Shown one piece after another: positions 27,042-64,000 of a stretch of DNA of 64,000 bases. A model generated the notes under the pieces. It was not told the origin of the DNA and searched no databases. It saw nothing but the letters and a program-made list of their open reading frames with translations. Numbering within the stretch: the stretch's first letter is position 1; each line of letters starts with the position of its first letter. Source of the stretch: Schmidtea polychroa (lineage: Eukaryota); assembly GCA_044892525.1 (NCBI GenBank), contig CM097885.1:189472001-189536000 (forward strand), given 5' to 3'. Made by a program: the position numbers and the translations under genes.

Positions 27042-27421
27042 AAAAGAAGTAAGTACACGGGAGACTTTGGTGGTTAGTTACAGGGCGGATATCGTGGAAC
27101 AAAGGATCCGGAATGAAAGTTCCGAAGTCATGCAGAGAAGGAAATATTAGCAATTCTGCTATGTATTCAACGGACCTAGCTATTTGCTATACGTCCTCAA
27201 GTACCAGCAACTTCGTCAGCCGTCCCAACCCAATCAGTCATTCATTGAACATTTGCTTTATGTGTATATATTTGTATTCTTATATGAACATTGATCGAAC
27301 ATTTAACATTTTGTGATTTGATTTACGATTGCATTATATATTTTATTTTTATTTTTTGGCTGCAATTATCTTGTCTTCACCGCTTTAATTTTCGGGACGA
27401 AAATTTTGTAGGGGGAAGACA

Positions 27422-28173: not shown

Positions 28174-28182
28174 ATATCTGTA

Positions 28183-28247
28183 CTATCTATTATCTATTAT
28201 CTATTATCTATTATCTATTATCTATTATCTATCTACTATCTATTACT
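28183..28247. repeat. (CTATTAT)n microsatellite at the LTR/non-LTR junction
   Basis: Direct 7-bp periodicity. Confidence 0.9.
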
Positions 28248-29542
28248 ATTTATTATTTCTTGCTTTAACCAGAAAGTAGTATTGATTATCTGTTAATTCA
28301 TACTTTTTAATTAGGTATGCTGATAGATTATTATTCCCTATTGTTTTGGCGATGTGCCCTTGGTGTATCATAGCATGCCATTTTTCAGCATACCACTTAC
28401 TAGTTAATGTATGTAATATTGACGATGTGTCTTCGAGGTTGTCATTATCTATATAATTTATTATATTATTATAATTAATCTCCAAAGAAAAACAATCATT
28501 AATAATCACAATTTTAGTATAGATATTAAATATTTCCATAAGTCTCTTATTTGAGTCTCTGAATTTTGAAAAAAGACAAAATGCTCCATTTATTTCTATC
28601 TTAATGTCACAGTTAATCCACTCTAATGCTTTAGCTATGTTTACATCCTTATTGCGTGAGCGTTGTTTCACTGCTTCAATGAGTTCACCTATTATGAAAT
28701 CTCTCATCTTTAAGTCATTGGAGTTAAACAATCTTATGAAATGGGTAATACTTTGTATTATGTATTCGTCAATGGTCTGCGTGATTCCTAACCCTCCTAA
28801 AGAGTAATGCGCATAAATAAAAAAGTTATTTAAATTTTGATGTATGTCTCCTAACTCATTTTTTATTATTTTTTTTATTTTTTGGTCAAACCCAAGTTGC
28901 TTTTCTCTATTTTGTACAATTTTATTCCTATTACAGTCTAAAATCATATGATTAATGGTACAAGTTCGAAAAGGGAATATAAATCATATATGCATTAAAT
29001 TTTTGCGCTGGATGTAGGTCTGATGCGTAAATATTTTCTTTTTCGTCAAGTGCTTTATCTAATATGTTTTCTATAGTATAGAAAGTTTGGCAACCGCTGT
29101 ACTATACTGTGTTTTCCCTTTTCTCCAAAGCATACTCCTAGACATCTATATATATTATCGTTATCTATTATTGGTATATTTTCATTATATATTCTTAATG
29201 GGGTGCCATTATGATTCTTATGATGCTGATAATAATCACACTTATTAGGTCTAAATTTGAGACCTGCTTTATCTGTCAACTCTATTATTTTATTAAACAT
29301 GTCTATGATGGTATTTCTCGACTCTGATATTAATACAATATCATCAGCATACGCCAATATGCTGACATTGTAATTACTAATGTGTAATGGGTAATTTTTA
29401 ATTATGTCCTTAAGTATAAAATTTATGGCAAGACAAAACAGTGTCATTGACATTGGGCAGCCTTGTCTAACACCATTGTTTATTTTAATCTTTTCAGTTA
29501 TTTGGCCTTCGCAGTTATAGTAAGTATAGCAGTTGTTATATA

Positions 29543-31257: not shown

Positions 31258-32253
31258 ATGAACCTTTGGTTCACACATTTTAGAATGTTATTTTCAAAAT
31301 ATTATGCCTTTTTATTTGTGATTTGTGTCGTGATAAATTGTCCAAATGCTTTAATAATCCAGCCCCATATAACAGAAAATGTTTCTCATATATTTTGTGG
31401 ATCTCAGAATTTAAAGTTTTACAACCACACTCCATTTTGGTATATAAATAACGAATTAAATCTTTGTGATGGTGAAATATTCTTGCTAACTTACGTTCAA
31501 AGTTCCTCTTGGCATTTTCACAGAAGGGAAATGATTCGTCAAACTTGGGGCTCAATTAAAACGGTTGACGGGTATCCAGTGCGTTTACTGTTCTTGGTTG
31601 GACAAATATCTGACGAGATATTACAAATGAAAGTAAAAAAAGAAATCAAAGATTATCAAGATGTTGTTCAAGCGGATTTCCTTGATACATATAATAACTT
31701 GACTTTAAAACATCTTGTAGCCCTTCACTGGATTCATAATTATTGTTCTCATGCTAAATTCATTCTGAAAACCGATGATGATACTTTTGTCAGTATTTTT
31801 CAAGTGGTTTACTATCTGGCGGAAAACTTCAATCCATTAGAAAAATTTATTCTTGGAAAAATAATAAACAAAGCTAGACCATTTCGAGGAATAAGCAAAT
31901 GGCGCATCTCTAGAGAGATTTATCCAGATGAATTCTATCCTCCATATATAGGTGGAGCGGCTTATGTGATATCCCAAAGTGCGATCTATCCACTTTACGT
32001 GTGTTCGTATTTCCACAAGCCTTTCTATATTGATGATATCTTTATTACTGGATTTATTAGGAAGTTGTCCAATGTCAATTTGAGGAGCTTGGACTGGCAA
32101 TTTGGACCGAAAACTTTATTCCATAAAAGGATAGGTATGAATTGGATGGAGAACTTATTTTTTGTGACCCAATATCGATTTGATGTGGAAATCTGGAAGA
32201 ATTTATGGTCGAATGTCCTCAAAATTGAATTGGAAGATTTTTATGGGTTTTAA
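31258..32253 (+). CDS. Beta-1,3-galactosyltransferase-like glycosyltransferase (GT31, Galactosyl_T), single exon
   Basis: 331 aa; N-terminal TM; RREMIRQTWG, DFLDTYNNLTLK, KTDDD, YPPYIGGAAYV and IDDIFITG motifs. Confidence 0.93.
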   Translation: MNLWFTHFRMLFSKYYAFLFVICVVINCPNALIIQPHITENVSHIFCGSQNLKFYNHTPFWYINNELNLCDGEIFLLTYVQSSSWHFHRREMIRQTWGSIKTVDGYPVRLLFLVGQISDEILQMKVKKEIKDYQDVVQADFLDTYNNLTLKHLVALHWIHNYCSHAKFILKTDDDTFVSIFQVVYYLAENFNPLEKFILGKIINKARPFRGISKWRISREIYPDEFYPPYIGGAAYVISQSAIYPLYVCSYFHKPFYIDDIFITGFIRKLSNVNLRSLDWQFGPKTLFHKRIGMNWMENLFFVTQYRFDVEIWKNLWSNVLKIELEDFYGF

Positions 32254-36018: not shown

Positions 36019-36690
36019 TTAAAGACTTCCCACTTTATCTCTCAGCATATAACTGCGATCGTGTATTCGTTTTCTTACCGTGTATGGTCCTTCATATCTA
36101 TCTTGATCCTTTTTTCGTATTTCTCGTTTGATTAACACTTTGTCTCCAATATCCAACCTCCTTGCAGTTGTTGTTTCCTCATTTTGTCTTTTACTTTCAA
36201 TTTTCAATGCGATATAGTTCCTGTTGATTCTACTATCATTATACCATTTTGATCTATCAAAAATAATATTATCCTCTATTATAAACCTTCCACTCGTTTG
36301 CGTTCTTATTTTATTTTTAATCTCCTCTATTACATCACTATTCATTTGCCATTCCTCTCCTTTGTCTTCAGTCATTATATTTAACATTCTGGTTTTCCTT
36401 CTTCCCATTTTAGGATTATCGTGTTCCATAAGACATTGTACACATGTGCCACACGTTTTCCTCCATAACATGTCTGCGTTAGTATGTAGTGTACCCTTTC
36501 TAAATTCCATTTTTATATCAAGGCTACTTAAATAGTTTATCCAGGTCTGGAATTGAGCTGTAATTGGCTTCTTCGTGGTTAGCATAAATGTTATTGCTTT
36601 ATGATCTGTACGTAGTGTAAATCTTTTTCCATATAAATAGTGATTGAAATGCCGACAAAAATAATATATAGCCAGGAGTTCCTTTCTTGC
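36019..36690 (-). pseudogene. Gypsy pol remnant (RNase H fused by deletion to the integrase tail)
   Basis: KELLAIY..RHFNHYLYGKRFTLRTDH, HTNADML and RYEGPY motifs. Confidence 0.8.
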
Positions 36691-46500: not shown

Positions 46501-49500
46501 TTAGAGAATGATAACTAAGGAAGTCAAAACCAATTAGGTCAATTACAACGATTATGGGATTATATTAGGAAACTCCAAATTCAGATAATCGGCAGTAGCC
46601 TTAGGTAGGGAAGAAGAAACTGACAATAGGAATTTGAGGAACAAGGTTAAGAAAAAGAAGAATTATAAGAGGAACTAAAGAATTTGAAAAGGAGGATTAA
46701 AGGAGTTCGAATCAGAGAGTGGGATCAAATAGAAGGTGAAACTTATTTTTAAATCGCACAAGGTCGAGACTTTCTAGAGCGGAGTTCGATCAGAAATTGT
46801 GAGCAAAATAGTAGTTAACTAAAAGTTGTAATTATTTATTGAGAATTGTAAATTTGCTATAAATCAAATATACGTTAGTAGATTGTATTTATCGATTTTT
46901 GGGACTCGTGGAGTCAGAGTAACATTGGTCGACTTTTTNNNNNNNNNNNNNNNNNNNNNNNNNNNNNNNNNNNNNNNNNNNNNNNNNNNNNNNNNNNNNN
47001 NNNNNNNNNNNNNNNNNNNNNNNNNNNNNNNNNNNNNNNNNNNNNNNNNNNNNNNNNNNNNNNNNNNNNNNNNNNNNNNNNNNNNNNNNNNNNNNNNNNN
47101 NNNNNNCTGTAATTTTCTCTTTAACAATTTTGATTTACGGACTGAACAAATGTGTGCAGTGAAAATTATTTTTCAACAAACAGCAGAAACTGAAGATACA
47201 TTTGCAGGAAACTGTTAAATATACCTATTAGCAGTTATTGCTATTTTGATTTATCTATGATTTTGGTTATCAAAAATTAGTTGAAAAATCAATTTGATTC
47301 ACTAGAATCTAGTGACTAGATAAATCGTTTCGTTTAGATTGACTTTCAAGAGTCAGATCAGACAAAATGATCACAAAACCTTCCATCTGGCTCGGTTAGT
47401 TTTGACAGACCCCGGTTAAAAATACACCTCAGTTGAAGGAATATTGTTTAATTTTAATAAAATATTAGAATAATATATTAATATACGAGTTACAATTTTA
47501 TATTTTTATAAAAATTAGTACAAAATTTTTCAATAGATATTATTTTAAAAAACAAATTGTCTTTAAGCTTTAATCAAGTGATAGCTTTAAAAATATTGAT
47601 ATTTGACCATAAAATAATCCAATTTAGATTTATGTTATGTTGTAAATTTAAATTTAATTTTCAGAAGCAAAAATTATTATTTCCAAAATCACTATTTACT
47701 CAACATCATTTGCTTTATATTACGACTTAATTTGTAATTTAAATTTCTGACACCTTAACATGAGGCCCGGATGAATAATTTTTTTTGAATTGGGCCTTTT
47801 AACAAAAAAGATTGCCCATCCGATTATTAACGAACATACGATATTTTAATGTCATGATAGAAAATTTCACTATCGTTTTATTCATTGGTGATATAATTTC
47901 TTAAATTTGAAATCAAAATCCTTGAACATTAAATCTTGACATTATTGGCTTTTTAAATGAAAAGATGTTCTTAAGATTTGAATAAATTGTCATCTGCAAG
48001 CGTTGAACCTTGATTATAAGGAGGATAATTCAATATCATTTTCTTCTGGATAATTTTTTAAGTATTTGAGAAAGTTTTGTCTTTTTGGAGAATCCTATAT
48101 TTACCATATGTGATGATATGATATCATTATAAATGTCTACGATGATACTTGTAAATGTTTTATGAGGATATCTATAAATGTAAACTGTTAAAAAATTTAT
48201 TCCGATATTCCAATATCCGAAATTGCAGCATACCTCCTTCAACACGTATAGGTTCTTCGTATAACATGATTTACAATATAACATTTAAAAATCTGATATC
48301 TTCCTTCAAATAATTTGTGTCACGAAGTAGTCTATAGTGTCACCATATGTACAAAAGTTTATGTTTCAAATTAAATAAATTCATTTCTGATTTTAATTTT
48401 TATCTCTCAATTGTCGCGAAAAATAATTAATTAAATCGTATACTTGTCTGGTTTAAAACAGGCATAATCATCTTCAAGACAAAACTTATTTAGGTTTTCA
48501 GAAATTGACGGAATGTCAAGCGATAAATATTGTCAGCCCAATAAAAAATATAGAAGATTCACATCATTATTTAGTTTTAGTGACGAAAATTAAAAGTTAA
48601 TACATGGCTGAATTTTTTAAAAATATTAAATATAAAATGCTAACTAATGTTCATCTAATAATTTTTTGTTACAAAGCTTAAATCAAGAGAATTTCTTTTT
48701 ACTGGGACGCCTTAAAAATATTGATGTCAATTTAAAACCTTTGACTTTTTACAGTGCTTTGGCAACTAGATTTACTCCATGACACTTTTATGGTGATGAG
48801 TATACTCCTCGTTGTATATAAAGCGCTAAAACAACGGCAATCTCAATTATCAAAATTTATATGACTAATGAGTTTCGCATAACACGGATTCTATATAGCA
48901 AGGTACCATTCGACTGTGCTATACTAAGGTTAAATTCGATATTTATAGAAATCAATTTATTGCATCACAATTAACTTTTAAAATATTCACTGAAGATAAA
49001 CAGAGTTCATTTGTACATTCTATCGAGTTATTTATTAAAGATTTCATAGTTTTTCAATTTCCACAATTATAAAAATTTTAAATTTTAATTAAAAAAAATT
49101 AGACACAGATACTTTTCTTTCAAGGTATGATTATATCTAACTCTACTGTCCTTTTTAGATGATCATAGTGAGTCGACTCAAATCTTCTTTTCTTTCCTAA
49201 TTATTTTTGTTATTATTAAATTTTGAAATTGCAGATGAGCAGTTCTTTATAGAAGATGTCAGAACTTTTAATTTAGATTTTTCTCTTCGCTGATTTACCA
49301 CCTGACATATTACATTTTCAGTAATTTTTTTAAACTACTAAAATTTTATATTCCTTTAATTATTGAATCATCATAAATAATTTATAAAAGAAATTTTGAA
49401 AATTAAAAAAATTACTTTTTAAATGTGTGAAATATGCTTCTATTATTAATAAAATTAGAATAGTTAACGAATATTTTGATTAATAATAAGAAATTTAATT

Positions 49501-52500
49501 GTTTTTTGGATGCGGGAGCCAAAATAAGTGTCATTAGTAAAGAATTACTAAACGCACTCGAAAATTTAAAAGTTGAAAACACTAATTTATTGATAAAAAT
49601 TGCAAATGAGAGCTCGTTAAAAATATTACGAAAGGTTTTGTTAAAAATAAAAATTTTAAATCAAGAAAATAAGGTCGATTCCTATTCCAAATGAAATTTC
49701 GCCAATTTTAATTTCAGAATGGAAAATTAGAAATGTGAAATGGATAAACATTTTAAAGCGAGAGGGAATGTAGGATAACTGGAAATAATACCTATTTGAA
49801 ATAATATTATTGCATGTTGAATTTGTATGTCTGAATGTCAAAGGTGTAATATTATTATTGATGTATGTGCCTATCTTGCTCAATATACTTACAATACTTC
49901 ATCTGGAGGGATAATCAGTTTTCTTATATTAATAAATTATATGTCTCCAAAGTCTTCTAATAATAGTACTAATGTAATTTCAATCGTTTTATTTGTCGTT
50001 AAGTGTTGCTCGTTCTTTAGTGTTGCGTTATAATTGTATTTTGCAGTAGTAATTTCCTGATGTATGAAACAAAATAATTTTTCTCATTGGAATAATGCAT
50101 GAAGTGTTTACGATCTTATGATAGCAGTTGATAAATATTAATTGAAATGTTAGAAATCAAGTTTAAATCAATTTATTTGTTTTGGTGAATCAGAACTTCG
50201 ATGATATTTATTAATTTCAATTCACATCATCATATGGATTTGATTAATTGAATTGAATATAATTATTCAAAGAGCATTGTAATTAGGATGTTTTGCATAG
50301 TCATCTATTGTCCTTGTGATGACAATTAAATATTCAATATAAAAGTCACTTCACCTGCCCTTATTAAAAAATAAAAATACCCAACACAATTAAGTTAGAT
50401 TGCATTATGAAAACTTCGAAATTAAAAAAACTTTGTTACACTCAATAACAGTTTATTATAATAATTTTTCACTTCAATTCACGATCAATGTTATTATTTC
50501 ATATAGCAATTTATAGCAAAGTTAATAAGTGAATTCAAACTAAACTTTTAACACTTGACACATTAGCTTTGATAAATAATATGGATAACTGCAATCTGAC
50601 AGGTTGCTATTACGCCTGTCAAACTTGACTATCGTTTGTTTGAGTTTTCATTCATTATATTTAAAAGAATTAGAGTTCCTAGCATATCATAACATTTAGC
50701 CATTAACATGCGAAGTTCTTCTCGACTATCTCAAGTCTATAAAAGAAATGAACAGGTTACTGATTGTTAAAAAATTCATTCCGAACGGGATTTTTGTTTC
50801 GGAAGTAATGATTGAAGAAGTGTTTGTACGTAAAATTATTTTTCTACCACTTTCTCAATTTCTATATAAAAACCTCTAAGTTTTGAAACATTAAATTTTT
50901 ACACACAGGTAAGTTTGTGTGTTCCTATACTATAACTAATTCGATTTCGTTTAAGATTATAGAAACTCTTATATTTTGGAATTAGGTGTATTATTTATTT
51001 CAAGAAAAAATATTTTACATCTGTAAGTTGTAATACAATGCATTGTAACCTATTTAGTGATGAAATACAAGGCATCCTCGTTAAACACATTAGAATAGTG
51101 CAGTATTACATAGAATCTGTAATAAACAAAACTTATATAGAAATTTTGATAATCCTTATCGTGTTATATGAAAACCTTGTTAATCAAAGTTTACGAGTAA
51201 TTTAAATGTAATATGGAATCCAAATTTTGCAAAAGTGTGAATATTTCTTGTTCTAATAAATAATATCTATTGTGAGAGGAAGCACTGTCAACAGCATCAT
51301 TTTTGGTTTAATTTTAACAAGTTTTTCCTCGTCTTTCAAATATTTAAAAAAAAATTTAGTCTCTAAATGCGTGATCTAGTTTCATTCATTAGTTTGAATT
51401 TAGATCTGATCAGACTCAAAATTTTTTTGGCTTAAATATCAAAATTTTTTAACTATAGAATATTTGTTTTTATTTTATTTTTAATTTTTTATTTTAATTT
51501 TCGAAATAGTTATTATTTCAAAGGGTAAATTACTGGAACAGGAATATTTCAATTTTATTTTCCAAATATCATAGACGAAATCATACGTCCGATCAAATTT
51601 GTGTAATGAGGAAAAGTTCTTAGAATTTTCTGCTCTACAAAACAGAGTTTAAAATAATTTTCTATGAATGTCAGCGGCGTAACAGTAGTTTGAGCAAAGA
51701 CAAATAATTATCAAATTTACATCTAAAAATGTTAAAGAAACAAAATAATTTAAAATGTAAAATGTAATTTTTTATAATAAATTCTGGTTTAATAAAATAG
51801 TTTTTAAATGTTATTTTATTTCTTATACAAAAATTTGTTCAAAATGTTCAGCTGCTGAGCAGGCTTCAGAAAAACTTTGCACGTGGTTCTAAAATGTGCA
51901 GTGGATGCATAACTTCTAAGTTTCTTATAATATGAATTGCATGTAATACTATACCATTCTGCCATGTTATACTAGGGTTAATCAAAGTATAAATATGTGT
52001 GAAGTATTATTTAAATAAAATTTTTCATTTATTCCATTACACTATGTGTAAGACATGTGAACTCTGTTATTAAAAGCTGCTAGCACATCTTCTAAATTAT
52101 TTTTTAAATCAGGTTTAAAAGTTAACGTCATAATTCCAAGTATTTATTTAATGAAATATTGTAAAATTTTCAAACAAATTTTCAGCTTGAATAAAATATT
52201 TTCGAAACCATTTATTAAAATTTCGATATTTAAAATATATTTATTTAAAAATTATTTACTAATAAAATTTCTTTTAAAAACTTCTTTATTTAAAGTTTAT
52301 CTTTAACAAAATCTCTTTTCAATTTAAAAATTATTTTAAAACTTGTTTTAATAGTCCATTATTTATCATTTAAAATTATCTTAATAAATCATTGAAACAT
52401 TTAATTCTCAGCTGAAAATACCTCACACGAGGGTTACTTGTAAATGCAAAAAAATATACAATCTATACTGTGAAATAATAACAAAATTAGAAACTGATTC

Positions 52501-54984: not shown

Positions 54985-55894
54985 TGTTAGGTTCGATAGG
55001 TAGGTAGTCGAACTAACACAAAAAATCTGACTCCAAATAAATAATTTATGCGTGTAGGTAATAAATAAGAAATATGATTTAAAACGTTTATTAACAATAA
55101 AATTTACAGGATTGTTTATTTTTGTACAAATAAATCACGCTGCTCTCTAAAGGAAAGAAAACGGTTATACAAACCGTCCTGAAGAGTATTTCTAAGAATC
55201 AAGGCTGGCCCTAAATGCGCCAACAGCCCGATATAGGTGAACGGAAAAGAGATAGGGAAGTTTACCAAATTTTTACGCGATGGAGTTAACCCAGAAATTG
55301 GTTAACTCTTTTTCAACAAATATTAATAGCGAAACAACACAAAAATACGTGCTGACGCTATGGCTTCCCTTATTTAAGTTTAATTTAATTTAAACAAATA
55401 AGTCTTTTATGCAAATATTTGATAATTATTTAAATAATTGATAAAACTAACTAATTTGATCTCTTTCTAAAATGGCTCCAAAGAATATTAAACTCAATTC
55501 ACGAATATTCAAAATTAATTCCTATTGATCGGTATATCTAATATCACTTGAAATTCTCCAATCGGATTGAAGTTTTTGAATGAAGTAAAATTCCAATTAA
55601 TTTTCTCTCGCTCGATGAACTTCTGACTATAGTTAAATTCCTAAATTAGTTTTATTTCAGAATCGGATTGATTTTTTCTATCTAAATTTAGCTCCTGTGG
55701 TTTTTTCTTAAATTCACTTATCTCGATTTCGTCCTCCTCGATCAATGAAATTTTTCTGGTATTTATATGACTTTAGTTATATCAAATCTATTAATAGTAA
55801 TTATTAATTACTATTTTTATTGTATATTTATTTTTAGTAATTATTTATTACTTAAACCCAAACTTTTGATTCTGGTTCCTACTGAACCCCAACA
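54985..55894 (-). mobile_element. 3' LTR (910 bp)
   Basis: TGTTGGGG...CCTAACA termini on the minus strand; follows PPT AGGGGGAAGA; homologous to 27422-28173. Confidence 0.85.
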
Positions 55895-56419
55895 TGTCTT
55901 CCCCCTAACAAGATTTTCGTCCCGAAAATTAAAGTGGTAAAGACAAGACAATTGCAGCTGATACATAAAATAAAAATATAAAAATAAAATTAAAACAACT
56001 GAATAAAATATATATAATGCAAGCAAAATCAAAATAAAATAATCAAAGATCGTTCATGAAGGAAATGTTAAACAAAATCAACAATGAAATCACTTAATCA
56101 AATATTGTTCATAAAGTAAATGTTTGTCGATTTGAATAATTGGATTGGATTGAGTTTGTCGAAGGTGCTGGGATTGAGGACGTATAGCAAATTGCTAGGT
56201 CCATTGAACACATAGCCGAATGATGTTTTCTTTTTAAATTTTAGATCTTGTAGCTTAAGTAGTGGTGCTACAGCTTGAGGTAATGTTCCTCCTTCTGCTC
56301 CTTGTTTGGGTTCACTCAACGGGGCCAACGCCTTTAAGATCTTGGTGACCCGTTCCACTATCTTTGCTGCTGGTGGTGATTTTTCTGTTTCCATTTTGGC
56401 CTAATTCACCACTCTACCG

Positions 56420-57847
56420 TCATTGGTATTGGGTGACTTGGAGGCAGTTATCGTCTGCACTCTCACAAGTGGCATAGTCTTCTTCATCAGCAATTGAGAT
56501 GGCTGGCGGCGACAAGGAATCTTCTTCCACTATTTTCTGCAATTTTGACCTGGGAATATCTTCTTTTACATAGCTCTCCATAGCTAAAGGTTTCTGCATG
56601 CTTGAAGTTCCGGGTTCCATCTGCTTTATTTGTGAAGACACCACCTCTTTCCGGGTGTCTGGTGAAATGTCATCAACCCAGATATCTCGTAAATTGTCGT
56701 AAATCTCCTTAATGGTTGTGACATCATTCTCCGTTTGAAGGTCCGAGAAGTGATGTGCCTCTTTACCGGTGACTGCTTTTGCCAGATATGCCAAACGGTA
56801 ATACCCGTTGCATTTCTTTAAGTCCCTACTTTCGAGACATTTAGCTGTGCCTAACTCACGGATTCCGAGTGCGCGCTGGATTGGGAATTTGATTACTTCT
56901 AATAAGTCCTTTACTAGCAATCCCACGATGATTTTCCCATCGCAGATTTTCCTAATTCTTTCGGCACAGTCTTCTCCGTCGAACTGTCCTGTTATTTCTC
57001 TCTCGGTCATACCATGCGCATGCGATTGGTAATGTTTGACCTGTGCTCTGGGGGTAACTCTCGTGTTGAGTATCAGATCGCCATTGAAATGTGAGATTGA
57101 GATGGCCACAATTGCCGGTTTCAGGAATTGTCGTAGTGTAGCGTAGTGAGCTTCTACGAAAATGGTGAGATTATTTTCTTGTCTAGGATCCAAGCGCTGT
57201 CTAATGAAAGACTTAAACGTTTTGATGTCGGTATCATTAACGTTATATGTCCAATTTGGGTCATTAACCCATCTCGTTGGTGTTTCTCTGTGAGGTTCCA
57301 GAATTTCCATTGCTACTATGGTATCTATTCCCTCACATAACAGTGAGATGTTCTTTTCCCTTCCATCCCCGTTTTCAATTTCCAGGGTTGTATGCTTTTG
57401 CAGCAAAATGAGGTTTGTGGCACCAGGAACATAAACCGTAAATGGTTTGTTGATGGCGTGTATCCACAGGTGGTTGGTCAGACTATGTCTGCCAAACTCA
57501 GGCATGACCTCGGTAAGCCTAATACTACCGTTATGCTTGCCCGGTATTCTTGAGATAATCATTTGACGCTTTGGGGCTTCGTCAAATTTAAAATTATTGG
57601 GTATGCCTGAGCAATGTCCGTAAAACCAGTGCCTTTGCCCTTTTCTGCTTTGCTCTATTACCTGCTTCTCGAGGTTTTTGTAAATAAGTTTTTCTTTTAG
57701 CAAGGTCGTAGCACGTATAATGCTATGTCTTCCTTGGTATTGGGATATTGGGTGGCTCTGCATTCCTGAAATAAAAATCATTAACCATAATATCAGATAT
57801 ACTGATATGCCATAATAGGCTAAACAGATATGCATGAGTCTTATCAT
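56420..57847 (-). CDS. ORF2: N-terminal signal/TM plus REX4/ISG20-like DEDDh exonuclease fold (degenerate catalytic motifs); tail continues out of frame at 56098-56394
   Basis: AIVAISISHFNGDLILNTRVTP..VKHY..HGMT..., GKIIVG..KDL, IRE, LAYLA and ENDV..IKEIY parallel REX4 motifs. Confidence 0.75.
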   Translation of the reverse strand: MIRLMHICLAYYGISVYLILWLMIFISGMQSHPISQYQGRHSIIRATTLLKEKLIYKNLEKQVIEQSRKGQRHWFYGHCSGIPNNFKFDEAPKRQMIISRIPGKHNGSIRLTEVMPEFGRHSLTNHLWIHAINKPFTVYVPGATNLILLQKHTTLEIENGDGREKNISLLCEGIDTIVAMEILEPHRETPTRWVNDPNWTYNVNDTDIKTFKSFIRQRLDPRQENNLTIFVEAHYATLRQFLKPAIVAISISHFNGDLILNTRVTPRAQVKHYQSHAHGMTEREITGQFDGEDCAERIRKICDGKIIVGLLVKDLLEVIKFPIQRALGIRELGTAKCLESRDLKKCNGYYRLAYLAKAVTGKEAHHFSDLQTENDVTTIKEIYDNLRDIWVDDISPDTRKEVVSSQIKQMEPGTSSMQKPLAMESYVKEDIPRSKLQKIVEEDSLSPPAISIADEEDYATCESADDNCLQVTQYQ

Positions 57848-57961
57848 AAAAGATCTACATATGCTGAATTTTAATGCTACCTGGAGCTCTACGTAAATAT
57901 AGATTTTAAGATATATATAAATATTTATATATGATTTTTCCCTCGGTGGAGTCTGTAATTG

Positions 57962-60900
57962 TCATAATTGCGACATCAGTACTCCATCGTAAGCCCTTAT
58001 GGCTTGTCTGAAATATAGCTTGGTCCAAATCCCCATAACTATCAGTGTAGTTATTAGTGATAGTACGGCCGATACCGTAATCCATACCCCTATGGGTATT
58101 TTCAGAATATATCCTGCATTAAAGTTTGTGATGGCATTACAGTCACAATAGTTTGTCAGGTTTGGGGTCGTTGGACAAGATATTTGTTTGATCGGTGGTA
58201 ACTGTCTAAGATGTTGCCACATCGCGGGATGTATCACCATGTTCTCCCGGACTACTTTTGGTGGTGTTTTCGTTATAACTGGCTGTTTCAGAGGTAATAT
58301 CTCCTCGAATACCTCGAACCACCTATCGTCCTGCCGTTTCCTCGGACTATAGTATATAACTAGAACCGAATATTCTACGGACTGATTTAGATACATTTCT
58401 TGGGAGGGAGAGTTCTGGTCTAACCATAATGTTTCTCTCGTGGTTGGTCCGTCTAGAATGCTGATTTTCACCTTCTCCTCCCTGCTAATTTGCTGGCTAA
58501 ACTTTACTTTATCCTTTTCGTAGGATATCGATATGCGATTTGTAAAATCCGCCGTCCTTAGTATCCAATTTGATACGTGATAGGTATACCAACCGCTCTG
58601 ATATAACCGTGACGCTGCGATATGCAGTTTATAATCCGTCTCTGCTTTTAAATCATATAATTCCCACTCTTTTTCTTCTGAATTGAGTTGGCGGATCCGC
58701 AAGTACTTGTTGTAGAAATGTAAATTGAATTTTGTAGCGTTATCGCACGTGGTGAGTATGCTAATTCCGTGATACGTTCTTATAAAATGTAAGTGTTCCA
58801 CTTGCATAGCCATAGGCTGAAAATATGCTTTTCTATCCCTTTTTGCCATTGCCAAAGTCATCATGCAGCTTATTATCAACAAAAAGGTTACTGATTTTGG
58901 AACACCCCTTGATCTCAATGGGTATCGGTGTTCTTGTGCTTCTTCGGTAATGTTTGGTTTCACCTGTTTTTCTAGTGCTTTTACTTTTGAATTTCCAGAA
59001 GTTCCTTTTGTTGGGATTTCACACTTTTTACACCGGTTAGCATGTACCATTATTGGTTCTGCTTTTCTGTTGGCCACAAGTTGTAATATGAGATTTGTAT
59101 CTGTGGTTCTCAATACCTCATATGGCCCTTTGAAATTTCGCATGAGTTTTGGTGATAAGCCTTTCTTGTTATAATGACTTTCCAACATCACCTGGTCTCC
59201 AACCAATATGCCATGATCCTTGGCTTTTCTGTCATGATAATCTTTGGATGCCTCCTGATTATATTTTATACTGAGGCCTGCTCTAGCCCATGCTTCCTGC
59301 ATTCTTTCCCTCATTTCCATTAGATAATCTTCCTGGTCTAAATACTGTGTTGCTTTAGGGAAAAACAACAGATCTACTGGCATTTTACTTTGCCTTAAGT
59401 ACATTAGGTAAAATGGTGTTTTACCTGTTCCTTCGTGCACTGCATTCCTGTATGCAAATAAACAGGATGGAATGTGGATGTCCCAATCCGTTTGCCCTGA
59501 ATTTACATATGATGCTAACATATTAGCTAATGTTCCATTAAATCGTTCTACTAGCCCATACGTCTGTGGGTGATATGGGGAAGTATTCAGCTTTAAAACT
59601 CCAAAATAATCATTTATTCCTTTGAGCAAATTACTCATGAAATCAGCTCCCCGATCCGTTAATAACTTTGTAGGTACTCCATACCTAAAGACGATTTGTT
59701 CAACGAAGATTCTAGCTATTGTATCAGCTTTGTGATTAGGCATCGGGTAGGCTTCTGGCCACTTCGTCAAGTAATCGCAGAACACTAAAATGTACTTGTT
59801 TCCGCTATTAGATTCTTTGAATGCCGTCATTTCCATAGGTGTAGATGGTACTGGCATCGGCTTCATTGGTACGTGTGGTTTCTTTCCGGTGTTTCTTCTG
59901 GTGATACAGATCTTACATGTCTGACACCAGGTTTTAACATCTTGTTTCATACCGGGCCAAAAATATTTTTGTTTTAGCCTTGACAATGTTTTTCTAGATG
60001 ACAGATGGCCTCCTAAGGCTCCATCGTGATACTGAAACATGAGTGCTTCACGGTAATTCTTAGGAACCATTATAACGTTATCTCTTACATCTGAGTATTT
60101 AACTAATCCTTCCTCCAGCACAAACTTGTCTTTATTCTTTTCCCAGTATTTTGTGAATTCTGTGGGCACGTATTTTGCTTCCAAGGCTTGACGAATAACG
60201 TTGATTTCTTCGTCAGATTTTTGTGCCTCCATTAAATCAGCTAGCCGGTTGGCTTCTCTGGTCAATGTGAAGATAGTCCCTTCGAGACGTCCTTCCTTCA
60301 CATCCTCTGCTTCCTCCTCCTGGTCCATTCTCGATAACGCGTCTGCATTTCCATTATGATCTCCCTTTCTATAATGGATTTCTATGTCATATGGCTGTAA
60401 AATAAATGCCCATGTGACTAGTTTTGATGTATCCATTGTGTGTTTTGTTAACCACTGTAATGGTCTATGATCGGTGTACACTATGATCTTTCGACCCGAA
60501 AGATAAGTTCTAAACTGGGTTATAGCATACACAATTGCTAAAGCCTCTAGTTCTATCACTGCGTAGTTTCTCTCGTGCGGTTTTAACCCTCTGCTAGCGT
60601 ATGCAATTGCATACTCATCTCCTAGGTCATCTCTCTGACCTAGCACAGCACCTATGCCCCGAGTGCTGGCATCTGTCATAACTAAAAATTGTCTCTCAAA
60701 GTCTGGAAATCGCAATATAGGTGGCTTGACGAGTTTTTCCTTGAGCATATCAAATGCTTCTTGCTGTTCTGTTCCCCACACAAATATGACGTTTTTGCCT
60801 TCTAACTGCGTGAGTGGAAAAGCTATAACCGAGAAGTTTCTAATGAACTTATTATAGTATCCAACTAGGCCTAAAAACCCTTTGATATGTTTAACGGTTT

Positions 60901-63900
60901 TAGGTTCCGGGAAATTCTTTACCTTTTCAACATTAGCTGGATCGGGTTTAACCCCGTCTCGTGATATGATATGGCCAACATATACCACTTCTGGTTCAGC
61001 CCATTTACATTTGGTTGGTTTCACTTTCATGTTGGCGTTGATCAACCTCTTGAATACATCTTCTAAATGTTCCAAGTGTTTTTCCAAATTTGGCGAGAAT
61101 ACTATGACGTCGTCAATGTATACCATCGCATGATGTACATCCATGAGCATCAAATTCATTGCTCTTTGAAATGTGGCTGGAGCTCCTGTGAGTCCAAATG
61201 GCATTACGTTATATTCGTAATGACCCATACTCGTAGAGAACGCTGTTATTGGTATAGTCTCATCTTTTAACTTAATTTGATAGAATCCCTTTTGGGCGTC
61301 CATTACTGAGAAGAACCTAGCATTTCTCATACGTCCATAGATATAATCTAACAATGGCAATGGATGGCTATCTTTGCATGTTGCTTCATTAACCATGCGA
61401 AAGTCGTTACATAATCGTACTGATCCATCCTTCTTGGCCACCACTATCATTGGTGATTGATATGGTGATTTACTATGCCTGATTATGCCATGTTTTAACA
61501 TCAATTCCACCTGTTTATCTACTGATTCCTCCAGACTGAATGGAATACGGTATGGTCTCAACTTTATAGGTTTTGTATTGGTGAGAACAATCTCATGTTC
61601 TAACAAGTTTGTTTTTCCCAGATCGTATTCATGTTTTGCGAATACCTGGTCATATTTCCTCAATAGCATATTTACTTGGATGTTTTCCTTTCTGGTTAGC
61701 ACTTTGCTATTTGCCGTAGGTGCATCGTAGTACTCAATGTCTGGATCTCTTTCTTCTGCCTTTACGGTGAGTATCGACCCTTCTCCCGTGGCTTGTGGCT
61801 CGTTTTGTTTCCAGATTCTGCCCACTCTGGTATTTGGATATAAGTAAAGTGGTTTAATGTCCAGATTGGCTACCCTGATTGGTATTCTGCCATTGACTAT
61901 TAAACCTACGCTATGAGTAACTGGTATGTTGTATTTCTCCGAAAATCTTTCGTCTGGTTCGAATACAACTTCACCTTCCCAATTATTGCTTGTAGCTACA
62001 AAACATACTGTTTCTGCTCTGGGTGGTATGATAGTTGTATGATCTATATAAGCTGTATCATCGTTGTAAATTTTTCTCTTTTTACCTCGTGCTCGGATTA
62101 ACAATCCAGATGCACAATCGAATACTACTCCTCGTAGTCTTTTTAGGATGTCCATACCCAATAGACATTCGGCTGGGAGACTTCTCATCACTATGATGTC
62201 GTGATGGAGCTCTTGATCACATAGCTTAATCTGGCAAGATAATGATCCTATTACATTTAATGAGGATCCGTTTGCTCCTGTTAATTTTACTCCTGCTGGT
62301 TTTAGCGACTGCAATTCATGATGGTTTAACAGTTTAGCTTCAATTATGGTACCATCTGCTCCTGAGTCTATCACCGCATTAACTGTATGTCGGTTCACTC
62401 TTATTTTTATCATTGGCTTTTTATCCAAATTCACTGGGTTATTGACCATCAAGATAGTATCGTGCGAGATGCCGACTGTATTGGCTCTCGTTTGTTCTGC
62501 TTCCAGTAATTCAGGATCACTCAGTTGAGGATTATACTCTTTAAATTTAGCTTTAATTGAATCTAACGCTTCCTTTGGATAGTGCACTTTAGGTAATTCT
62601 GGCAATGTTGAGCATGTCAAATTATTAAATATGGTATCTTCACCGATTTTCCATTGGTGTCGTCCTGTTCTGAGTGTTGTTTCCCTTGAATGTTCCCGCC
62701 CTTCGTTTGGTGAGGATGGTAAACTCCTCAGAGTTTGCAATTGTACATATCTTGGGCTTCTCTTGAATCTGGGTGACCTTAAGTCGTATTTTTGGTCGGA
62801 ACTGTCATATTCTCCTTCTGATGACTGTTTTTTCACGTAGATTTCCTTTGATTGGTCATATGGAGGAAGATATTCCTTAAATCTCGATTTTCTTTGTTGC
62901 TGAATCGGTTTTTTGTTGTAGTTCTGTTTTCGTGATTGATTTGATCTTGAGGATGTTTCACGAGAGCCTCCATTACCTCCTCCCTTAGAATTGTTATCGT
63001 CCCGATAACTAGAATACTCCTCCATTTCTGTTCCAATTACTTCATGTTTGACCAAATGTTTCTGTCTAATTTCTTTAATTTCCTTTCTGTGATGTTTGAA
63101 TAATGCAAACTCTGCACACATAGGACATAGTCCTAATAGCAGTTTCCATGACCATCCTCCAATTTTGAATATGCTATATGTTGACATCAGTTGTGTAATT
63201 ATCAGCTTTAAAATTACAAATATTGCGTAAATTTCTGAACATCCCGCAACGAATATACCAAAATTGGTAAATCGTCCCCATATTTTCATCATTACGTTCT
63301 TTGCTGCTTCTTTATAGTGTTCCGGTCCAAATAATAGATTGTAATCTGGTCGTATTAAGCTATCATGATAAATTGTTCTTATAATTTGCGTGATACCTCT
63401 GTCTCTGATTTGTGGGAATAGCAATGTTCTACTTGCTTCCTCGATATCGTCGGGAGTGTAAATCCCTCCTTTTGCTAATTCGTCCAGTGACTTGAATTCC
63501 AGATTATCTTTTAGTTTAGTTACCTCCAAGGTCTCTACCCGTTGTGTAGATGGTTTTCTTTCCGGCAGGGATATCCACATGTCATTTATTTTGTATAATG
63601 GTGATATTGCCGGGTTGCATATAGCTGGTTGAGGTTTAGCGTTTTCCTCCAGTAACTTTCTGGTTACAGGCATAACAAATCTCAATTTTCCCTGGTAAGA
63701 CACTGGCAGTTCTAGAGTGCACTGATTAAATCTGGCTAATTGTACTTCCACTGGTTTACACTCATAGCTATATATAGCTTCCCCCATGATTCTGCCAAAC
63801 ATTCCGTCTTCCAATAACATTGGAGTAACCAACTCTGGGTTAACGATAGATCTATTTCTGACTATTTCACAATTTAACTTGCAATCGTTTAGTATCACCT

Positions 63901-64000
63901 CTTGATACATATCCTGCATTTGTCCTTGGAGGTCGTGATATAAATAATCTACTTTATTATTTATATAATTCGTGATTTTGATATCCTTTACGTGTAAGAC
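57962..64000 (-). CDS. Polyprotein: chuvirus-like glycoprotein + TM, linker, protease (~62130-62410), RT (YIDD ~61109-61120), RNase H, integrase, signal peptide, Fn3-like ectodomain, TM
   Basis: 1985-aa ORF; I translated the 27 upstream codons to 64000 and they are also open; motifs VIDSG, LDAQKGFYQ-like, YIDD, TDAS, IELEAL, TDH, H..GH..CxxC, TDRG, VERFN, GPY. Confidence 0.93.
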   Translation of the reverse strand, partial: VLHVKDIKITNYINNKVDYLYHDLQGQMQDMYQEVILNDCKLNCEIVRNRSIVNPELVTPMLLEDGMFGRIMGEAIYSYECKPVEVQLARFNQCTLELPVSYQGKLRFVMPVTRKLLEENAKPQPAICNPAISPLYKINDMWISLPERKPSTQRVETLEVTKLKDNLEFKSLDELAKGGIYTPDDIEEASRTLLFPQIRDRGITQIIRTIYHDSLIRPDYNLLFGPEHYKEAAKNVMMKIWGRFTNFGIFVAGCSEIYAIFVILKLIITQLMSTYSIFKIGGWSWKLLLGLCPMCAEFALFKHHRKEIKEIRQKHLVKHEVIGTEMEEYSSYRDDNNSKGGGNGGSRETSSRSNQSRKQNYNKKPIQQQRKSRFKEYLPPYDQSKEIYVKKQSSEGEYDSSDQKYDLRSPRFKRSPRYVQLQTLRSLPSSPNEGREHSRETTLRTGRHQWKIGEDTIFNNLTCSTLPELPKVHYPKEALDSIKAKFKEYNPQLSDPELLEAEQTRANTVGISHDTILMVNNPVNLDKKPMIKIRVNRHTVNAVIDSGADGTIIEAKLLNHHELQSLKPAGVKLTGANGSSLNVIGSLSCQIKLCDQELHHDIIVMRSLPAECLLGMDILKRLRGVVFDCASGLLIRARGKKRKIYNDDTAYIDHTTIIPPRAETVCFVATSNNWEGEVVFEPDERFSEKYNIPVTHSVGLIVNGRIPIRVANLDIKPLYLYPNTRVGRIWKQNEPQATGEGSILTVKAEERDPDIEYYDAPTANSKVLTRKENIQVNMLLRKYDQVFAKHEYDLGKTNLLEHEIVLTNTKPIKLRPYRIPFSLEESVDKQVELMLKHGIIRHSKSPYQSPMIVVAKKDGSVRLCNDFRMVNEATCKDSHPLPLLDYIYGRMRNARFFSVMDAQKGFYQIKLKDETIPITAFSTSMGHYEYNVMPFGLTGAPATFQRAMNLMLMDVHHAMVYIDDVIVFSPNLEKHLEHLEDVFKRLINANMKVKPTKCKWAEPEVVYVGHIISRDGVKPDPANVEKVKNFPEPKTVKHIKGFLGLVGYYNKFIRNFSVIAFPLTQLEGKNVIFVWGTEQQEAFDMLKEKLVKPPILRFPDFERQFLVMTDASTRGIGAVLGQRDDLGDEYAIAYASRGLKPHERNYAVIELEALAIVYAITQFRTYLSGRKIIVYTDHRPLQWLTKHTMDTSKLVTWAFILQPYDIEIHYRKGDHNGNADALSRMDQEEEAEDVKEGRLEGTIFTLTREANRLADLMEAQKSDEEINVIRQALEAKYVPTEFTKYWEKNKDKFVLEEGLVKYSDVRDNVIMVPKNYREALMFQYHDGALGGHLSSRKTLSRLKQKYFWPGMKQDVKTWCQTCKICITRRNTGKKPHVPMKPMPVPSTPMEMTAFKESNSGNKYILVFCDYLTKWPEAYPMPNHKADTIARIFVEQIVFRYGVPTKLLTDRGADFMSNLLKGINDYFGVLKLNTSPYHPQTYGLVERFNGTLANMLASYVNSGQTDWDIHIPSCLFAYRNAVHEGTGKTPFYLMYLRQSKMPVDLLFFPKATQYLDQEDYLMEMRERMQEAWARAGLSIKYNQEASKDYHDRKAKDHGILVGDQVMLESHYNKKGLSPKLMRNFKGPYEVLRTTDTNLILQLVANRKAEPIMVHANRCKKCEIPTKGTSGNSKVKALEKQVKPNITEEAQEHRYPLRSRGVPKSVTFLLIISCMMTLAMAKRDRKAYFQPMAMQVEHLHFIRTYHGISILTTCDNATKFNLHFYNKYLRIRQLNSEEKEWELYDLKAETDYKLHIAASRLYQSGWYTYHVSNWILRTADFTNRISISYEKDKVKFSQQISREEKVKISILDGPTTRETLWLDQNSPSQEMYLNQSVEYSVLVIYYSPRKRQDDRWFEVFEEILPLKQPVITKTPPKVVRENMVIHPAMWQHLRQLPPIKQISCPTTPNLTNYCDCNAITNFNAGYILKIPIGVWITVSAVLSLITTLIVMGIWTKLYFRQAIRAYDGVLMSQL

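What the first reader, a model, noticed from the sequence alone, without database searches (positions are those of the whole stretch)
57962..64000. Gypsy retroelement with an Env-Pol-Env2 polyprotein: Pol lies between two membrane proteins
One uninterrupted frame (at least 2012 codons, open to the window edge) runs viral glycoprotein, TM, protease, RT, RNase H, integrase, signal peptide, ectodomain, TM. Env-bearing LTR elements normally read gag-pol-env, with Pol packaged as Gag-Pol. Here the protease is preceded by a glycoprotein with no Gag in between, and the usual env slot after integrase holds a different type I membrane protein. The topology is self-consistent (lumen, TM, cytosolic Pol, signal, lumen, TM). 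Inference: Pol may be recruited to budding particles through the glycoprotein anchor, and the element may use a two-protein envelope (fusogen plus attachment protein).
Basis: partly seen in the sequence, partly recalled or inferred. Interest (0 to 1): 0.92.

Follow-up and report, generated by a model that had tools for sequence, protein, structure and literature searches.

The report
Gypsy retroelement with gag-env-pol gene order
This is a real, intact-looking Ty3/gypsy retrovirus-like element that carries a chuvirus-type fusion glycoprotein in front of its protease and polymerase, a gene order already described in 2022 and 2026; what looks undescribed is a second membrane protein after integrase and a downstream exonuclease-like gene.

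Summary
On the minus strand, 57962..64000 is one open frame of 2012 codons running off the window edge. It reads: C-terminal half of a Monjiviricetes/chuvirus-type class III glycoprotein (Pfam E 6e-55), membrane anchor, about 210 residues of low-complexity linker, protease, RT, RNase H, integrase, signal-like segment, about 245-residue ectodomain, membrane anchor.

It is not a one-off fusion. At least 16 relatives at 32-53% identity are collinear. They form a well-supported Ty3/gypsy clade (56/60 bootstraps).

The "Gag-less" reading is not supported. In relatives Gag, with a CCHC knuckle, lies upstream of G, in the same ORF or in an adjacent one. The true order is therefore gag-env-pro-pol. 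That order is published: Sacco et al. 2022 for nematodes, and Chary & Hayashi 2026 for nematodes, bryozoans and flatworms.

Two features are not described in the literature I could read:
- A post-integrase membrane protein that is conserved in topology but not in sequence (dN/dS 0.14 between the two window copies).
- A conserved downstream ORF with an ISG20-like DEDDh exonuclease fold. The window copy has lost most of the catalytic residues.

The host was not identified; it is an AT-rich metazoan, probably not a nematode.

Verdict: a new variant of a known kind, of moderate interest.

The parts
55150..64000 (-). In-window part of the LTR retroelement (main copy). It continues beyond the window edge; the 3' end is approximate.
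   Evidence: GC rises from about 0.28 to 0.40 at about 56 kb. ORFs. Homology to the second in-window copy reaches about 55150.
57962..64000 (-). Polyprotein ORF, 2012 codons plus stop, open at the window edge.
63056..64000 (-). C-terminal half of a chuvirus-like class III fusion glycoprotein G (aa 1-315). It includes the membrane anchor (about 63185-63265) and a conserved Cys-containing hydrophobic tail segment.
   Evidence: PF24664 E 5.9e-55, profile positions 300-612 of 653. 810 library hits; exogenous chuvirus glycoproteins at 26-30% identity. 4 Cys columns invariant in 29 sequences, all kept here.
62426..63055 (-). Low-complexity basic/Ser/Gln-rich linker between the G tail and protease (aa 316-525). 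No Gag domain.
   Evidence: No Pfam family at E<=0.1. Linker length and sequence vary among relatives.
62129..62425 (-). Retropepsin-type aspartic protease (aa 526-624).
   Evidence: PF13975/PF00077; D-S-G motif read.
60965..61438 (-). Reverse transcriptase core (aa 855-1012).
   Evidence: PF00078 E 4e-32; Ty3 RT 4ol8 E 2e-82; Y-I-D-D read.
60389..60778 (-). RNase H (aa 1075-1204).
   Evidence: PF17917/PF17919.
59021..60067 (-). Integrase: H2C2 zinc finger, DDE core and a GPY/F-type C-terminal region (aa 1312-1660).
   Evidence: PF17921, PF00665; collinear with P0001 integrase to aa 1659.
57965..59020 (-). Post-integrase membrane protein ('Env2', aa 1661-2012): signal-like segment (about 58844-58915), about 245-aa beta-rich ectodomain with 4 Cys and 3 N-x-S/T, membrane anchor (about 58025-58099), 20-aa tail.
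   Evidence: No Pfam or PDB sequence match. dN/dS 0.14 against the second copy. AF2 model of low confidence.
56420..57847 (-). ORF2, 475 aa: N-terminal hydrophobic segment plus an ISG20/REXO-like DEDDh exonuclease-fold domain that lacks most catalytic residues.
   Evidence: Homologous to the downstream ORFs of L001, L004, L006 and L007 (E 1e-12 to 1e-17). Profile hits ISG20L2 7yw5, E 1.8e-10. Motif columns. dN/dS 0.07.
56098..56394 (-). ORF3, 98 aa, unknown function; also present in the second copy.
55895..55908 (-). Putative polypurine tract directly upstream of the 3' LTR.
   Evidence: Read (inference).
55150..55894 (-). Putative 3' LTR (starts TGTTG...). The 3' terminus is uncertain by a few tens of bases. 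The 5' LTR is off-window.
   Evidence: inference from the PPT and from where homology to the second copy ends.
20439..28179 (+). Second, degraded, 5'-truncated copy of the same element family (outer bounds only). It runs collinearly from just before PR through Env2, ORF2, ORF3 and the LTR.

Best explanation
The region is the 3' three-quarters of an LTR retroelement of the Ty3/gypsy (Metaviridae) group. This lineage carries a glycoprotein captured from a chuvirus-like negative-strand RNA virus between gag and protease. The full order is LTR, gag, G, PR-RT-RH-IN, membrane protein, ORF2 (exonuclease fold), small ORF3, LTR.

Shown:
- The in-window frame is continuous and its enzymatic motifs are intact.
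- The architecture is shared by a well-supported clade of relatives.
- Gag lies upstream of G in those relatives.
- The extra coding regions evolved under purifying selection.

Inferred mechanism:
- The genomic RNA is translated into one giant polytopic membrane polyprotein.
- Gag stays cytosolic. An internal signal sequence threads the G ectodomain into the ER lumen, and the G anchor stops transfer, so protease and polymerase stay cytosolic, tethered to the G tail.
- A second internal signal threads the post-integrase ectodomain into the lumen, and the last anchor fixes it.
- Host signal peptidase cuts on the lumenal side and the element's own protease cuts on the cytosolic side, releasing the parts.
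- This would place Gag, Pol and two surface proteins in equal amounts at one membrane.
- G is the fusogen. The post-integrase protein is a fast-evolving accessory surface glycoprotein. ORF2 is an accessory nucleic-acid-binding or processing factor that is probably not catalytic in this copy.
For: - Frame and domains.
- Ty3 RT is by far the best solved-structure match (E 2e-82, against 5e-52 for a caulimovirus enzymatic polyprotein and about 1e-32 for foamy-virus and MLV-type RTs).
- G matches PF24664 at E 5.9e-55. Named exogenous chuvirus glycoproteins match at 26-30% identity, with 4 invariant Cys columns, all kept here.
- The window protein is collinear with P0001 (2974 aa: Gag-CCHC, signal, G, anchor, PR, RT, RH, IN, signal, Ig-like, anchor) at 37% identity in G and 40% in Pol.
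- The same order is seen in P0003, P0006, P0008, P0010, P0011, P0040, P0068, P0153, P0154 and P0160-P0164.
- Gag is a separate adjacent ORF in L004 and L005. L004 has an LTR pair enclosing gag, the polyprotein and ORF2.
- In the RT-RH neighbour-joining tree, the window groups with the close G-bearing relatives in a 17-tip clade, 56/60 bootstraps.
- A hydrophobic segment precedes G and another follows IN in complete relatives. 13 of 17 post-integrase tails have at least two hydrophobic segments.
- dN/dS between the two window copies: Env2 0.14, RNase H 0.18, ORF2 0.07.
- ORF2 homologues occur in 4 other loci, and their profile hits ISG20L2 and ISG20.
- A published gag-env-pol arrangement exists in gypsy-type elements.
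Against: - The 5' part of this copy (N-terminal half of G, Gag, PBS, 5' LTR) is off-window and could not be retrieved. Gag upstream is inferred from relatives only.
- Topology rests on a simple hydropathy scan, not on a trained predictor. A second, weaker hydrophobic segment after the G anchor passes my threshold in one relative (P0011). If it spans the membrane, Pol would face the lumen.
- There is no expression, splicing or protein-processing data. A spliced Gag-Pol or subgenomic messages cannot be excluded.
- The post-integrase protein has no detectable homologue, and its model is unreliable (pLDDT 42).
- Most relatives come from metagenome contigs. Two of these (L004, L005) are visibly chimeric with high-GC bacterial DNA outside the element.
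Confidence: 0.8

Rival explanations
1. One reading: a Gag-less element in which the glycoprotein replaces Gag as the carrier of Pol, so that Pol enters particles only through the glycoprotein anchor.
For: No Gag domain lies between G and PR or anywhere else in the in-window frame. Pol is physically fused to the G cytoplasmic tail. If the signal in front of G is cleaved, Pol would be attached to G and not to Gag.
Against: Nine relatives carry Gag with a CCHC knuckle upstream of G in the same ORF, and two carry it in an adjacent ORF. The closest relative, P0153, has four knuckles. The window ends at profile position 300 of G, so absence of Gag in the window says nothing.
Confidence: 0.07
2. Same element, different expression: the single frame is not used as one polyprotein. 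Splicing removes the glycoprotein cassette to give a conventional Gag-Pol, and G, the post-integrase protein and ORF2/ORF3 come from spliced or subgenomic messages.
For: Retroviruses and insect errantiviruses express env by splicing (established knowledge). ORF2 and ORF3 lie behind a stop codon and need some such route. Gag is a separate ORF in L004 and L005.
Against: The frame is kept continuous from G through the post-integrase anchor in many relatives at 32-53% identity, and through Gag as well in nine of them. Nothing would demand that if the parts were always translated separately. Internal signal-like segments sit exactly at the two places a polyprotein would need them.
Confidence: 0.12
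3. Artefact or accident: an endogenous chuvirus glycoprotein fossil that happens to abut a gypsy insertion, or a misassembly, with no biological unity.
For: Chuvirus glycoprotein fossils flanked by gypsy fragments are common in insects (PMC10084718). Some related contigs are chimeric.
Against: The same junction occurs in at least 16 independent, diverged relatives. There is no stop in 2012 codons. The family is a well-supported RT clade. A second copy in the same window has the same order downstream of PR.
Confidence: 0.01

Closest known systems
Non-canonical gag-env-pol metaviruses: nematode endogenous retroviruses of Sacco et al. 2022 (J Gen Virol 103:001739) and the GAG-ENV-POL 'errantiviruses' of Nematoda, Bryozoa and Platyhelminthes in Chary & Hayashi 2026 (PMC13524379)
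   Same: A Ty3/gypsy polymerase with a class III glycoprotein of negative-strand RNA virus type placed between gag and pol. From my own recollection of the 2022 abstract, which I could not check because the paper is not held, those elements have a continuous gag-env-pro-pol frame, chuvirus/nyamivirus-like Env and extra ORFs.
   Different: The host here does not look like a nematode: none of the 97 relatives of a neighbouring host gene is from a nematode. The papers I could read mention neither an in-frame post-integrase membrane protein nor an exonuclease-fold ORF. No sequences of those elements were available, so clade membership is untested.
Anakin and related mosquito BEL/Pao elements with a captured chuvirus glycoprotein (Dezordi et al. 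2020, PMC7642597)
   Same: The same kind of captured glycoprotein (Jingchuvirales type) in an LTR retroelement.
   Different: The polymerase here is Ty3/gypsy, not BEL/Pao: no Peptidase_A17 match, and Ty3 RT is the best match. The glycoprotein lies in front of protease in the same frame.
Insect errantiviruses (gypsy, ZAM, 17.6) and the metazoan F-type and gB-type env-carrying gypsy elements
   Same: Ty3/gypsy backbone plus an envelope fusogen; retrovirus-like organisation.
   Different: Those read gag-pol-env, with env as a separate, spliced downstream ORF of F or gB type. Here the fusogen is upstream of Pol, and the downstream slot holds an unrelated membrane protein in frame.
Bdelloid rotifer Juno/Vesta LTR elements with accessory ORF3s (Rodriguez et al. 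2017, PMC5408684)
   Same: LTR retroelements that carry an extra DEDD-superfamily exonuclease ORF or small membrane-protein ORFs after pol.
   Different: There the exonuclease is the RNase D-like DEDDy type. Here it is the ISG20/REXO-like DEDDh type, and the window copy lacks most catalytic residues. The membrane protein here is fused in frame to integrase.
Polytopic membrane polyproteins of RNA viruses (flavivirus polyprotein, bunyavirus M polyprotein)
   Same: What it would work like: alternating cytosolic and lumenal parts set by internal signal and stop-transfer segments, cut by signal peptidase and a viral protease (established knowledge; an inference here).
   Different: No homology, and processing here is entirely untested.

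Membership tests
Ty3/gypsy (Metaviridae) LTR retroelement | Pol domain order PR-RT-RH-IN | tested here: met
   Pfam map
Ty3/gypsy (Metaviridae) LTR retroelement | RT/RNase H closest to Ty3-type enzymes rather than to BEL/Pao, Copia or Retroviridae | tested here: met
   Ty3 RT 4ol8 E 2e-82, well ahead of all others. PF17917, PF17919 and PF17921 are typical of gypsy. The nearest outgroups in the tree are chromodomain-bearing gypsy elements.
Ty3/gypsy (Metaviridae) LTR retroelement | Two LTRs, with a PBS after the 5' LTR and a PPT before the 3' LTR | tested here: inconclusive
   Only a putative PPT and 3' LTR are in the window; the 5' end is off-window. The relative L004 has an LTR pair of about 335 bp at 83% identity.
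Ty3/gypsy (Metaviridae) LTR retroelement | Gag with capsid and a CCHC nucleocapsid knuckle | not testable with these tools
   Off-window for this copy. Present in relatives.
gag-env-pol non-canonical metaviruses (NERV-like) | Envelope glycoprotein placed directly upstream of protease/polymerase | tested here: met
   G aa 2-315 and PR aa 526-624 lie in one frame.
gag-env-pol non-canonical metaviruses (NERV-like) | Env related to glycoproteins of chuvirus/nyamivirus-type negative-strand RNA viruses | tested here: met
   PF24664 E 5.9e-55. Named chuvirus glycoproteins are among the hits.
gag-env-pol non-canonical metaviruses (NERV-like) | Gag upstream of env | not testable with these tools
   Off-window. 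Met in 11 relatives.
gag-env-pol non-canonical metaviruses (NERV-like) | Falls inside the published nematode clade (host a nematode; RT groups with NERVs) | tested here: inconclusive
   No NERV sequence was available and the paper is not held. The neighbouring host gene has no nematode relative among 97 hits, which argues against a nematode host.
Errantivirus in the strict sense (gag-pol-env, F-type env) | env as a separate ORF downstream of pol, homologous to baculovirus/paramyxovirus F | tested here: not met
   The downstream membrane protein is in frame with integrase and matches no Pfam or PDB entry.
BEL/Pao plus chuvirus G (Anakin-like) | BEL/Pao-type protease and RT | tested here: not met
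   No Peptidase_A17 match; gypsy-type domains instead.
DEDDh exonuclease (RNase_T / ISG20 / REXO) for ORF2 | Homology to the exonuclease fold | tested here: met
   Window ORF2 against the L001/L004 ORF2, which carry PF00929. Family profile against ISG20L2, E 1.8e-10.
DEDDh exonuclease (RNase_T / ISG20 / REXO) for ORF2 | Catalytic D-E-D-D plus H residues | tested here: not met
   Four relatives keep D, E, D/E, H and D. The window ORF2 keeps only the last D in the aligned columns.

The most novel reading that the evidence does not exclude
This gypsy lineage is a complex retrovirus-like agent of invertebrates. It builds its particle from one polytopic polyprotein, delivers Pol to the membrane on the tail of a captured RNA-virus fusogen, and carries two further host-interaction genes not described for such elements. 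One is a rapidly replaced second surface glycoprotein (Ig-like in some members). The other is an ISG20-like exonuclease-fold accessory protein.
Probability: 0.25. Interest if true: 0.7.

Novelty: new variant of a known kind. Interest (0 to 1): 0.45.

Why it matters
The headline claim, envelope in front of polymerase in a gypsy element, is real but already published, so it does not open a new category.

The analysis adds three things:
- The arrangement defines a diverse, well-supported clade. Its members in the searched collections come almost entirely from unannotated metagenome contigs, and its host here is probably not a nematode.
- The whole coding capacity, often including Gag, is kept in one frame, with signal and anchor segments exactly where a polytopic polyprotein needs them. 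This raises a concrete question about how Pol is packaged when a lumenal protein separates it from Gag.
- The lineage has two further conserved slots: a membrane protein fused after integrase and an ISG20-like exonuclease-fold gene. Both were under purifying selection.

These are useful leads on how retroelements collect viral and host genes. They are also a practical warning for annotation: such loci can be mis-called as separate virus fossils plus gypsy fragments.

Tried and rejected
- **Exact look-up of window ORF2:** not on record in the assembly index.
- **Pattern scans for close relatives:** three scans (metagenome contigs twice, viral contigs once) found nothing, so the off-window 5' part could not be recovered from a close relative.
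- **Contigs of P0001 and P0153:** listed, but without DNA.
- **Rfam on the whole window:** no family reached threshold.
- **PDB sequence searches with G and with the post-integrase protein:** no hit.
- **AlphaFold of the post-integrase protein from a single sequence:** pLDDT 42, pTM 0.26. I judged this too poor for a fold search and ran none.
- **Host identification:** the neighbouring galactosyltransferase gene gave only an unnamed 78% match and 30-40% matches spread over arthropods, molluscs and others. The host is left undetermined.
- **Sacco et al. 2022:** not held. Only its title and the way it is cited could be used.
- **Bacterial flanks of L004 and L005:** I considered horizontal transfer or a bdelloid-type host and rejected it. 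The abrupt GC jumps show contig chimeras.
- **Hidden Gag in the G-to-protease linker:** rejected. There is no family match, and the linker varies in length and sequence among relatives.


Full report
**1. The observation**

The feature lies on the minus strand. window:57962-64000:- translates as 2012 codons without a stop, closed by a stop at 57962-57964 and open at the window edge. The element stands out from its AT-rich surroundings: about 0.40 GC against 0.24-0.30.

Pfam places these domains along the frame:
- PF24664 Monjiviricetes_fusion at aa 2-315, E 5.9e-55.
- Aspartic protease at aa 526-624.
- RVT_1 at aa 855-1012.
- RT_RNaseH at aa 1075-1204.
- Integrase_H2C2 plus rve at aa 1312-1494.

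The glycoprotein match covers profile positions 300-612 of 653. The window therefore cuts the glycoprotein roughly in half; about 300 residues of it, and whatever precedes it, lie outside.

A hydropathy scan finds three hydrophobic segments:
- The glycoprotein anchor at aa 249-267.
- A signal-like segment at aa 1700-1718, which ends in an A-x-A motif.
- A C-terminal anchor at aa 1965-1983, followed by a tail of about 20 residues.

The protease D-S-G, the RT Y-I-D-D, the RNase H and the integrase zinc and DDE motifs can all be read in the translation.

**2. The element is not a one-off**

A word-indexed search with the glycoprotein-plus-linker part found P0001, 2974 aa. Its map is:
- Gag with a CCHC knuckle;
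- a hydrophobic segment, then full-length G and its anchor;
- a linker, then PR, RT, RH and IN;
- a second hydrophobic segment, an Ig-like domain and a C-terminal hydrophobic end.

It is collinear with the window protein at 37% identity in G and 40% across Pol.

An exhaustive HMMER search with the glycoprotein part found 810 proteins.
- The best matches are long polyproteins, at 32-42% identity. Local mapping shows [Gag]-G-PR-RT-RH-IN in P0003, P0006, P0008, P0010, P0011, P0040 and P0068, and partly in P0002, P0004, P0005 and P0007.
- Below these come proteins of about 650 aa at 24-30% identity. They include named exogenous chuvirus glycoproteins (Yichun mivirus, Tacheng tick virus 4, Hubei diptera virus 11, Wufeng shrew chuvirus 2) and insect genomic fossils.
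- In an alignment of 29 such C-terminal halves, four Cys columns are invariant, and the window protein keeps all four.

A search with the Pol part shows that most of the nearest polymerases (42-53% identity) carry PF24664. The next tier, at 38% or less, is ordinary gypsy, much of it with chromodomains. P0153, P0161, P0162 and P0163 again have Gag-CCHC, G and Pol in one ORF.

In a neighbour-joining tree of 118 RT-RH segments, the window groups with these in a 17-tip clade with 56/60 bootstrap support. Three other G-bearing polyproteins (P0040, P0068, P0188) fall outside it.

**3. Where Gag is**

Nothing Gag-like lies between G and protease. The stretch of about 210 residues is low-complexity and basic, and it varies in length and sequence among relatives.

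Gag is upstream of G in relatives:
- In nine relatives it is in the same ORF.
- In L004 and L005 it is an adjacent or overlapping ORF.

L004 has an LTR pair (7149-7482 and 22409-22743, 83% identity). The pair encloses gag, the polyprotein, an exonuclease-domain ORF and small ORFs.

The true order in the lineage is therefore gag-env-pro-pol, and the window simply ends before gag. I could not retrieve the off-window part.

**4. The rest of the element**

*The post-integrase membrane protein.* In 13 of 17 family members, the tail after integrase has at least two hydrophobic segments, with an ectodomain of roughly 100-700 residues (mostly 220-300) between the first and the last. The tails are mostly not alignable with one another:
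- Ig-like in P0001 and P0163.
- An extra protease-like domain in P0006, P0154, P0160 and P0162.
- The window's tail has no convincing relative.
- There is no Pfam or PDB sequence match, and the single-sequence AlphaFold model is unreliable.

The slot and its topology are conserved; the occupant is not.

*ORF2.* Downstream, ORF2 (56420..57847, 475 aa) is homologous to the downstream ORFs of L001, L004, L006 and L007.
- Two of those carry PF00929 RNase_T.
- A family profile hits ISG20L2 (E 1.8e-10), ISG20 and SDN1.
- The four relatives keep the D, E, D/E, H and D positions. The window ORF2 keeps only the last D, so it is probably not a working exonuclease.

*ORF3 and the 3' end.* A 98-aa ORF3 follows. 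After it come a purine run and a putative 3' LTR of about 745 bp beginning TGTTG.

**5. A second copy, and selection**

The window holds a second copy of the same family on the plus strand (outer bounds 20439..28179). It is 5'-truncated: no Gag, no G. Its damage, by gene:
- **pol:** two large internal deletions (most of RT and much of integrase), one insertion in the protease region, frame changes in protease and in integrase, and two in-frame stops in the RNase H stretch.
- **The post-integrase protein:** four in-frame stops, no frame change.
- **ORF2:** one nested insertion and reading in three frames.

Its order downstream of protease matches the main copy.

Codon comparison of single-frame stretches between the two copies:

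| Region | dN/dS | dS |
|---|---|---|
| Post-integrase protein | 0.14 | 0.64 |
| RNase H | 0.18 | 0.34 |
| ORF2 (123 codons) | 0.07 | 1.13 |

Most of the divergence between the two copies therefore accumulated while all three regions were under purifying selection.

**6. How it most likely works**

Shown: the continuous frame, the domain order, its conservation, Gag upstream in relatives, hydrophobic segments in front of G and after integrase, and selection.

Inferred:
- One polytopic polyprotein is made. Gag and Pol are cytosolic; G and the post-integrase ectodomain are lumenal.
- Signal peptidase and the element's protease separate the parts.
- G keeps its native orientation, with a cytoplasmic C-terminus, so Pol on its tail would be cytosolic.
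- If the signal in front of G is cleaved, Pol stays attached to G and not to Gag.

Caveats:
- A second, weaker hydrophobic, Cys-containing segment follows the anchor. By my hand calculation it scores about 1.2 on the Kyte-Doolittle scale here, and it passes my threshold in P0011. If it spanned the membrane, the topology would invert.
- Splicing is untested.

For the post-integrase protein I commit to an accessory surface glycoprotein involved in host interaction. I give attachment partner about one chance in three; exclusion or immune modulation are the alternatives. The evidence is its topology, its even Cys counts in several members, the Ig-like versions and its rapid turnover.

**7. Comparison with what is known**

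- **Chary & Hayashi 2026** (PMC13524379) report gypsy elements ordered GAG-ENV-POL in Nematoda, Bryozoa and Platyhelminthes. They find these are not monophyletic. They also report chuvirus-like glycoproteins next to gypsy POL in several arthropod groups.
- **Sacco et al. [quoted passage not shown] That paper is not held. My recollection of its abstract (continuous gag-env-pro-pol ORF, chuvirus/nyamivirus-like Env, extra ORFs) is unverified.
- **Dezordi et al. 2020** describe the BEL/Pao counterpart, and their 2023 follow-up found no clear capture by gypsy.
- **Rodriguez et al. 2017** describe DEDDy exonuclease and small membrane ORFs behind pol in rotifer LTR elements.

The eLife text mentions no exonuclease and no in-frame post-integrase membrane protein.

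**8. Host and surroundings**

The window is a transposon-rich, AT-rich stretch of a metazoan genome. It holds hAT, GIY-YIG/Penelope-like, Pao-peptidase and non-LTR RT fragments, and a single-exon GT31 galactosyltransferase gene. The 97 relatives of that gene include no nematode. The best named ones are arthropods and a mollusc at 31-38% identity, and an unnamed entry matches at 78%. The host is undetermined.

**9. Verdict**

The finding is real and biologically coherent, but its central novelty claim is already in the literature. It is best filed as a new variant of the gag-env-pol metavirus kind. Two conserved extra modules and the question of how Pol is packaged deserve descriptive follow-up.

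Noticed in passing
window 20439..28179 (+): A second, degraded and 5'-truncated copy of the same element family, about 77-90% identical in nucleotides to the main copy. It contains a nested ORF resembling the hAT-like ORF at 692..1876.
   Followed up: partly
window 56420..57847 (-); L001 9547-11622; L004 19559-21613; L006 13230-14729; L007 10924-12426: A conserved accessory ORF with an ISG20/REXO-like DEDDh exonuclease fold behind the polyprotein. The window version has an added N-terminal hydrophobic segment and has lost most catalytic residues, yet shows dN/dS 0.07.
   Followed up: partly
P0005, P0006, P0011, P0160, P0162; L005 14902-17118: Several family members carry a second or third protease-like domain, between G and the main protease, after integrase, or in the downstream ORF together with ankyrin repeats.
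   Followed up: no
L004 1-7000 and L005 17000-24948: The metagenome contigs carrying relatives jump abruptly from about 35% to 65-77% GC and carry bacterial-type genes there. These look like assembly chimeras, not part of the elements.
   Followed up: partly
P0003 (NCBI HBK71150.1, GCA_003506685.1): A complete Gag-G-Pol polyprotein of this eukaryotic retroelement lineage is deposited as a hypothetical protein of a Flavobacteriaceae metagenome-assembled genome. This is probably eukaryotic contamination of the bin.
   Followed up: no
window 692..1876 (-), 7512..7892 (-), 15881..17077 (-), 28246..29453 (-), 36019..36585 (-), 49473..49667 (+): Other transposon remains: a hAT dimerisation domain, a GIY-YIG (Penelope-like) ORF, a Pao-type peptidase fragment, a non-LTR RT fragment, and weak gypsy-like RNase H and protease matches.
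   Followed up: partly
window 31258..32253 (+): A single-exon GT31 galactosyltransferase gene, presumably a host gene. Its best match is an unnamed UniParc entry at 78% identity, and there are no nematode relatives.
   Followed up: partly
   Followed up: no
L006 16872-18689: A protein-primed family B DNA polymerase gene (PF03175), typical of Maverick/Polinton-like elements, lies next to the related element. This is consistent with a eukaryotic host for that contig.
   Followed up: no
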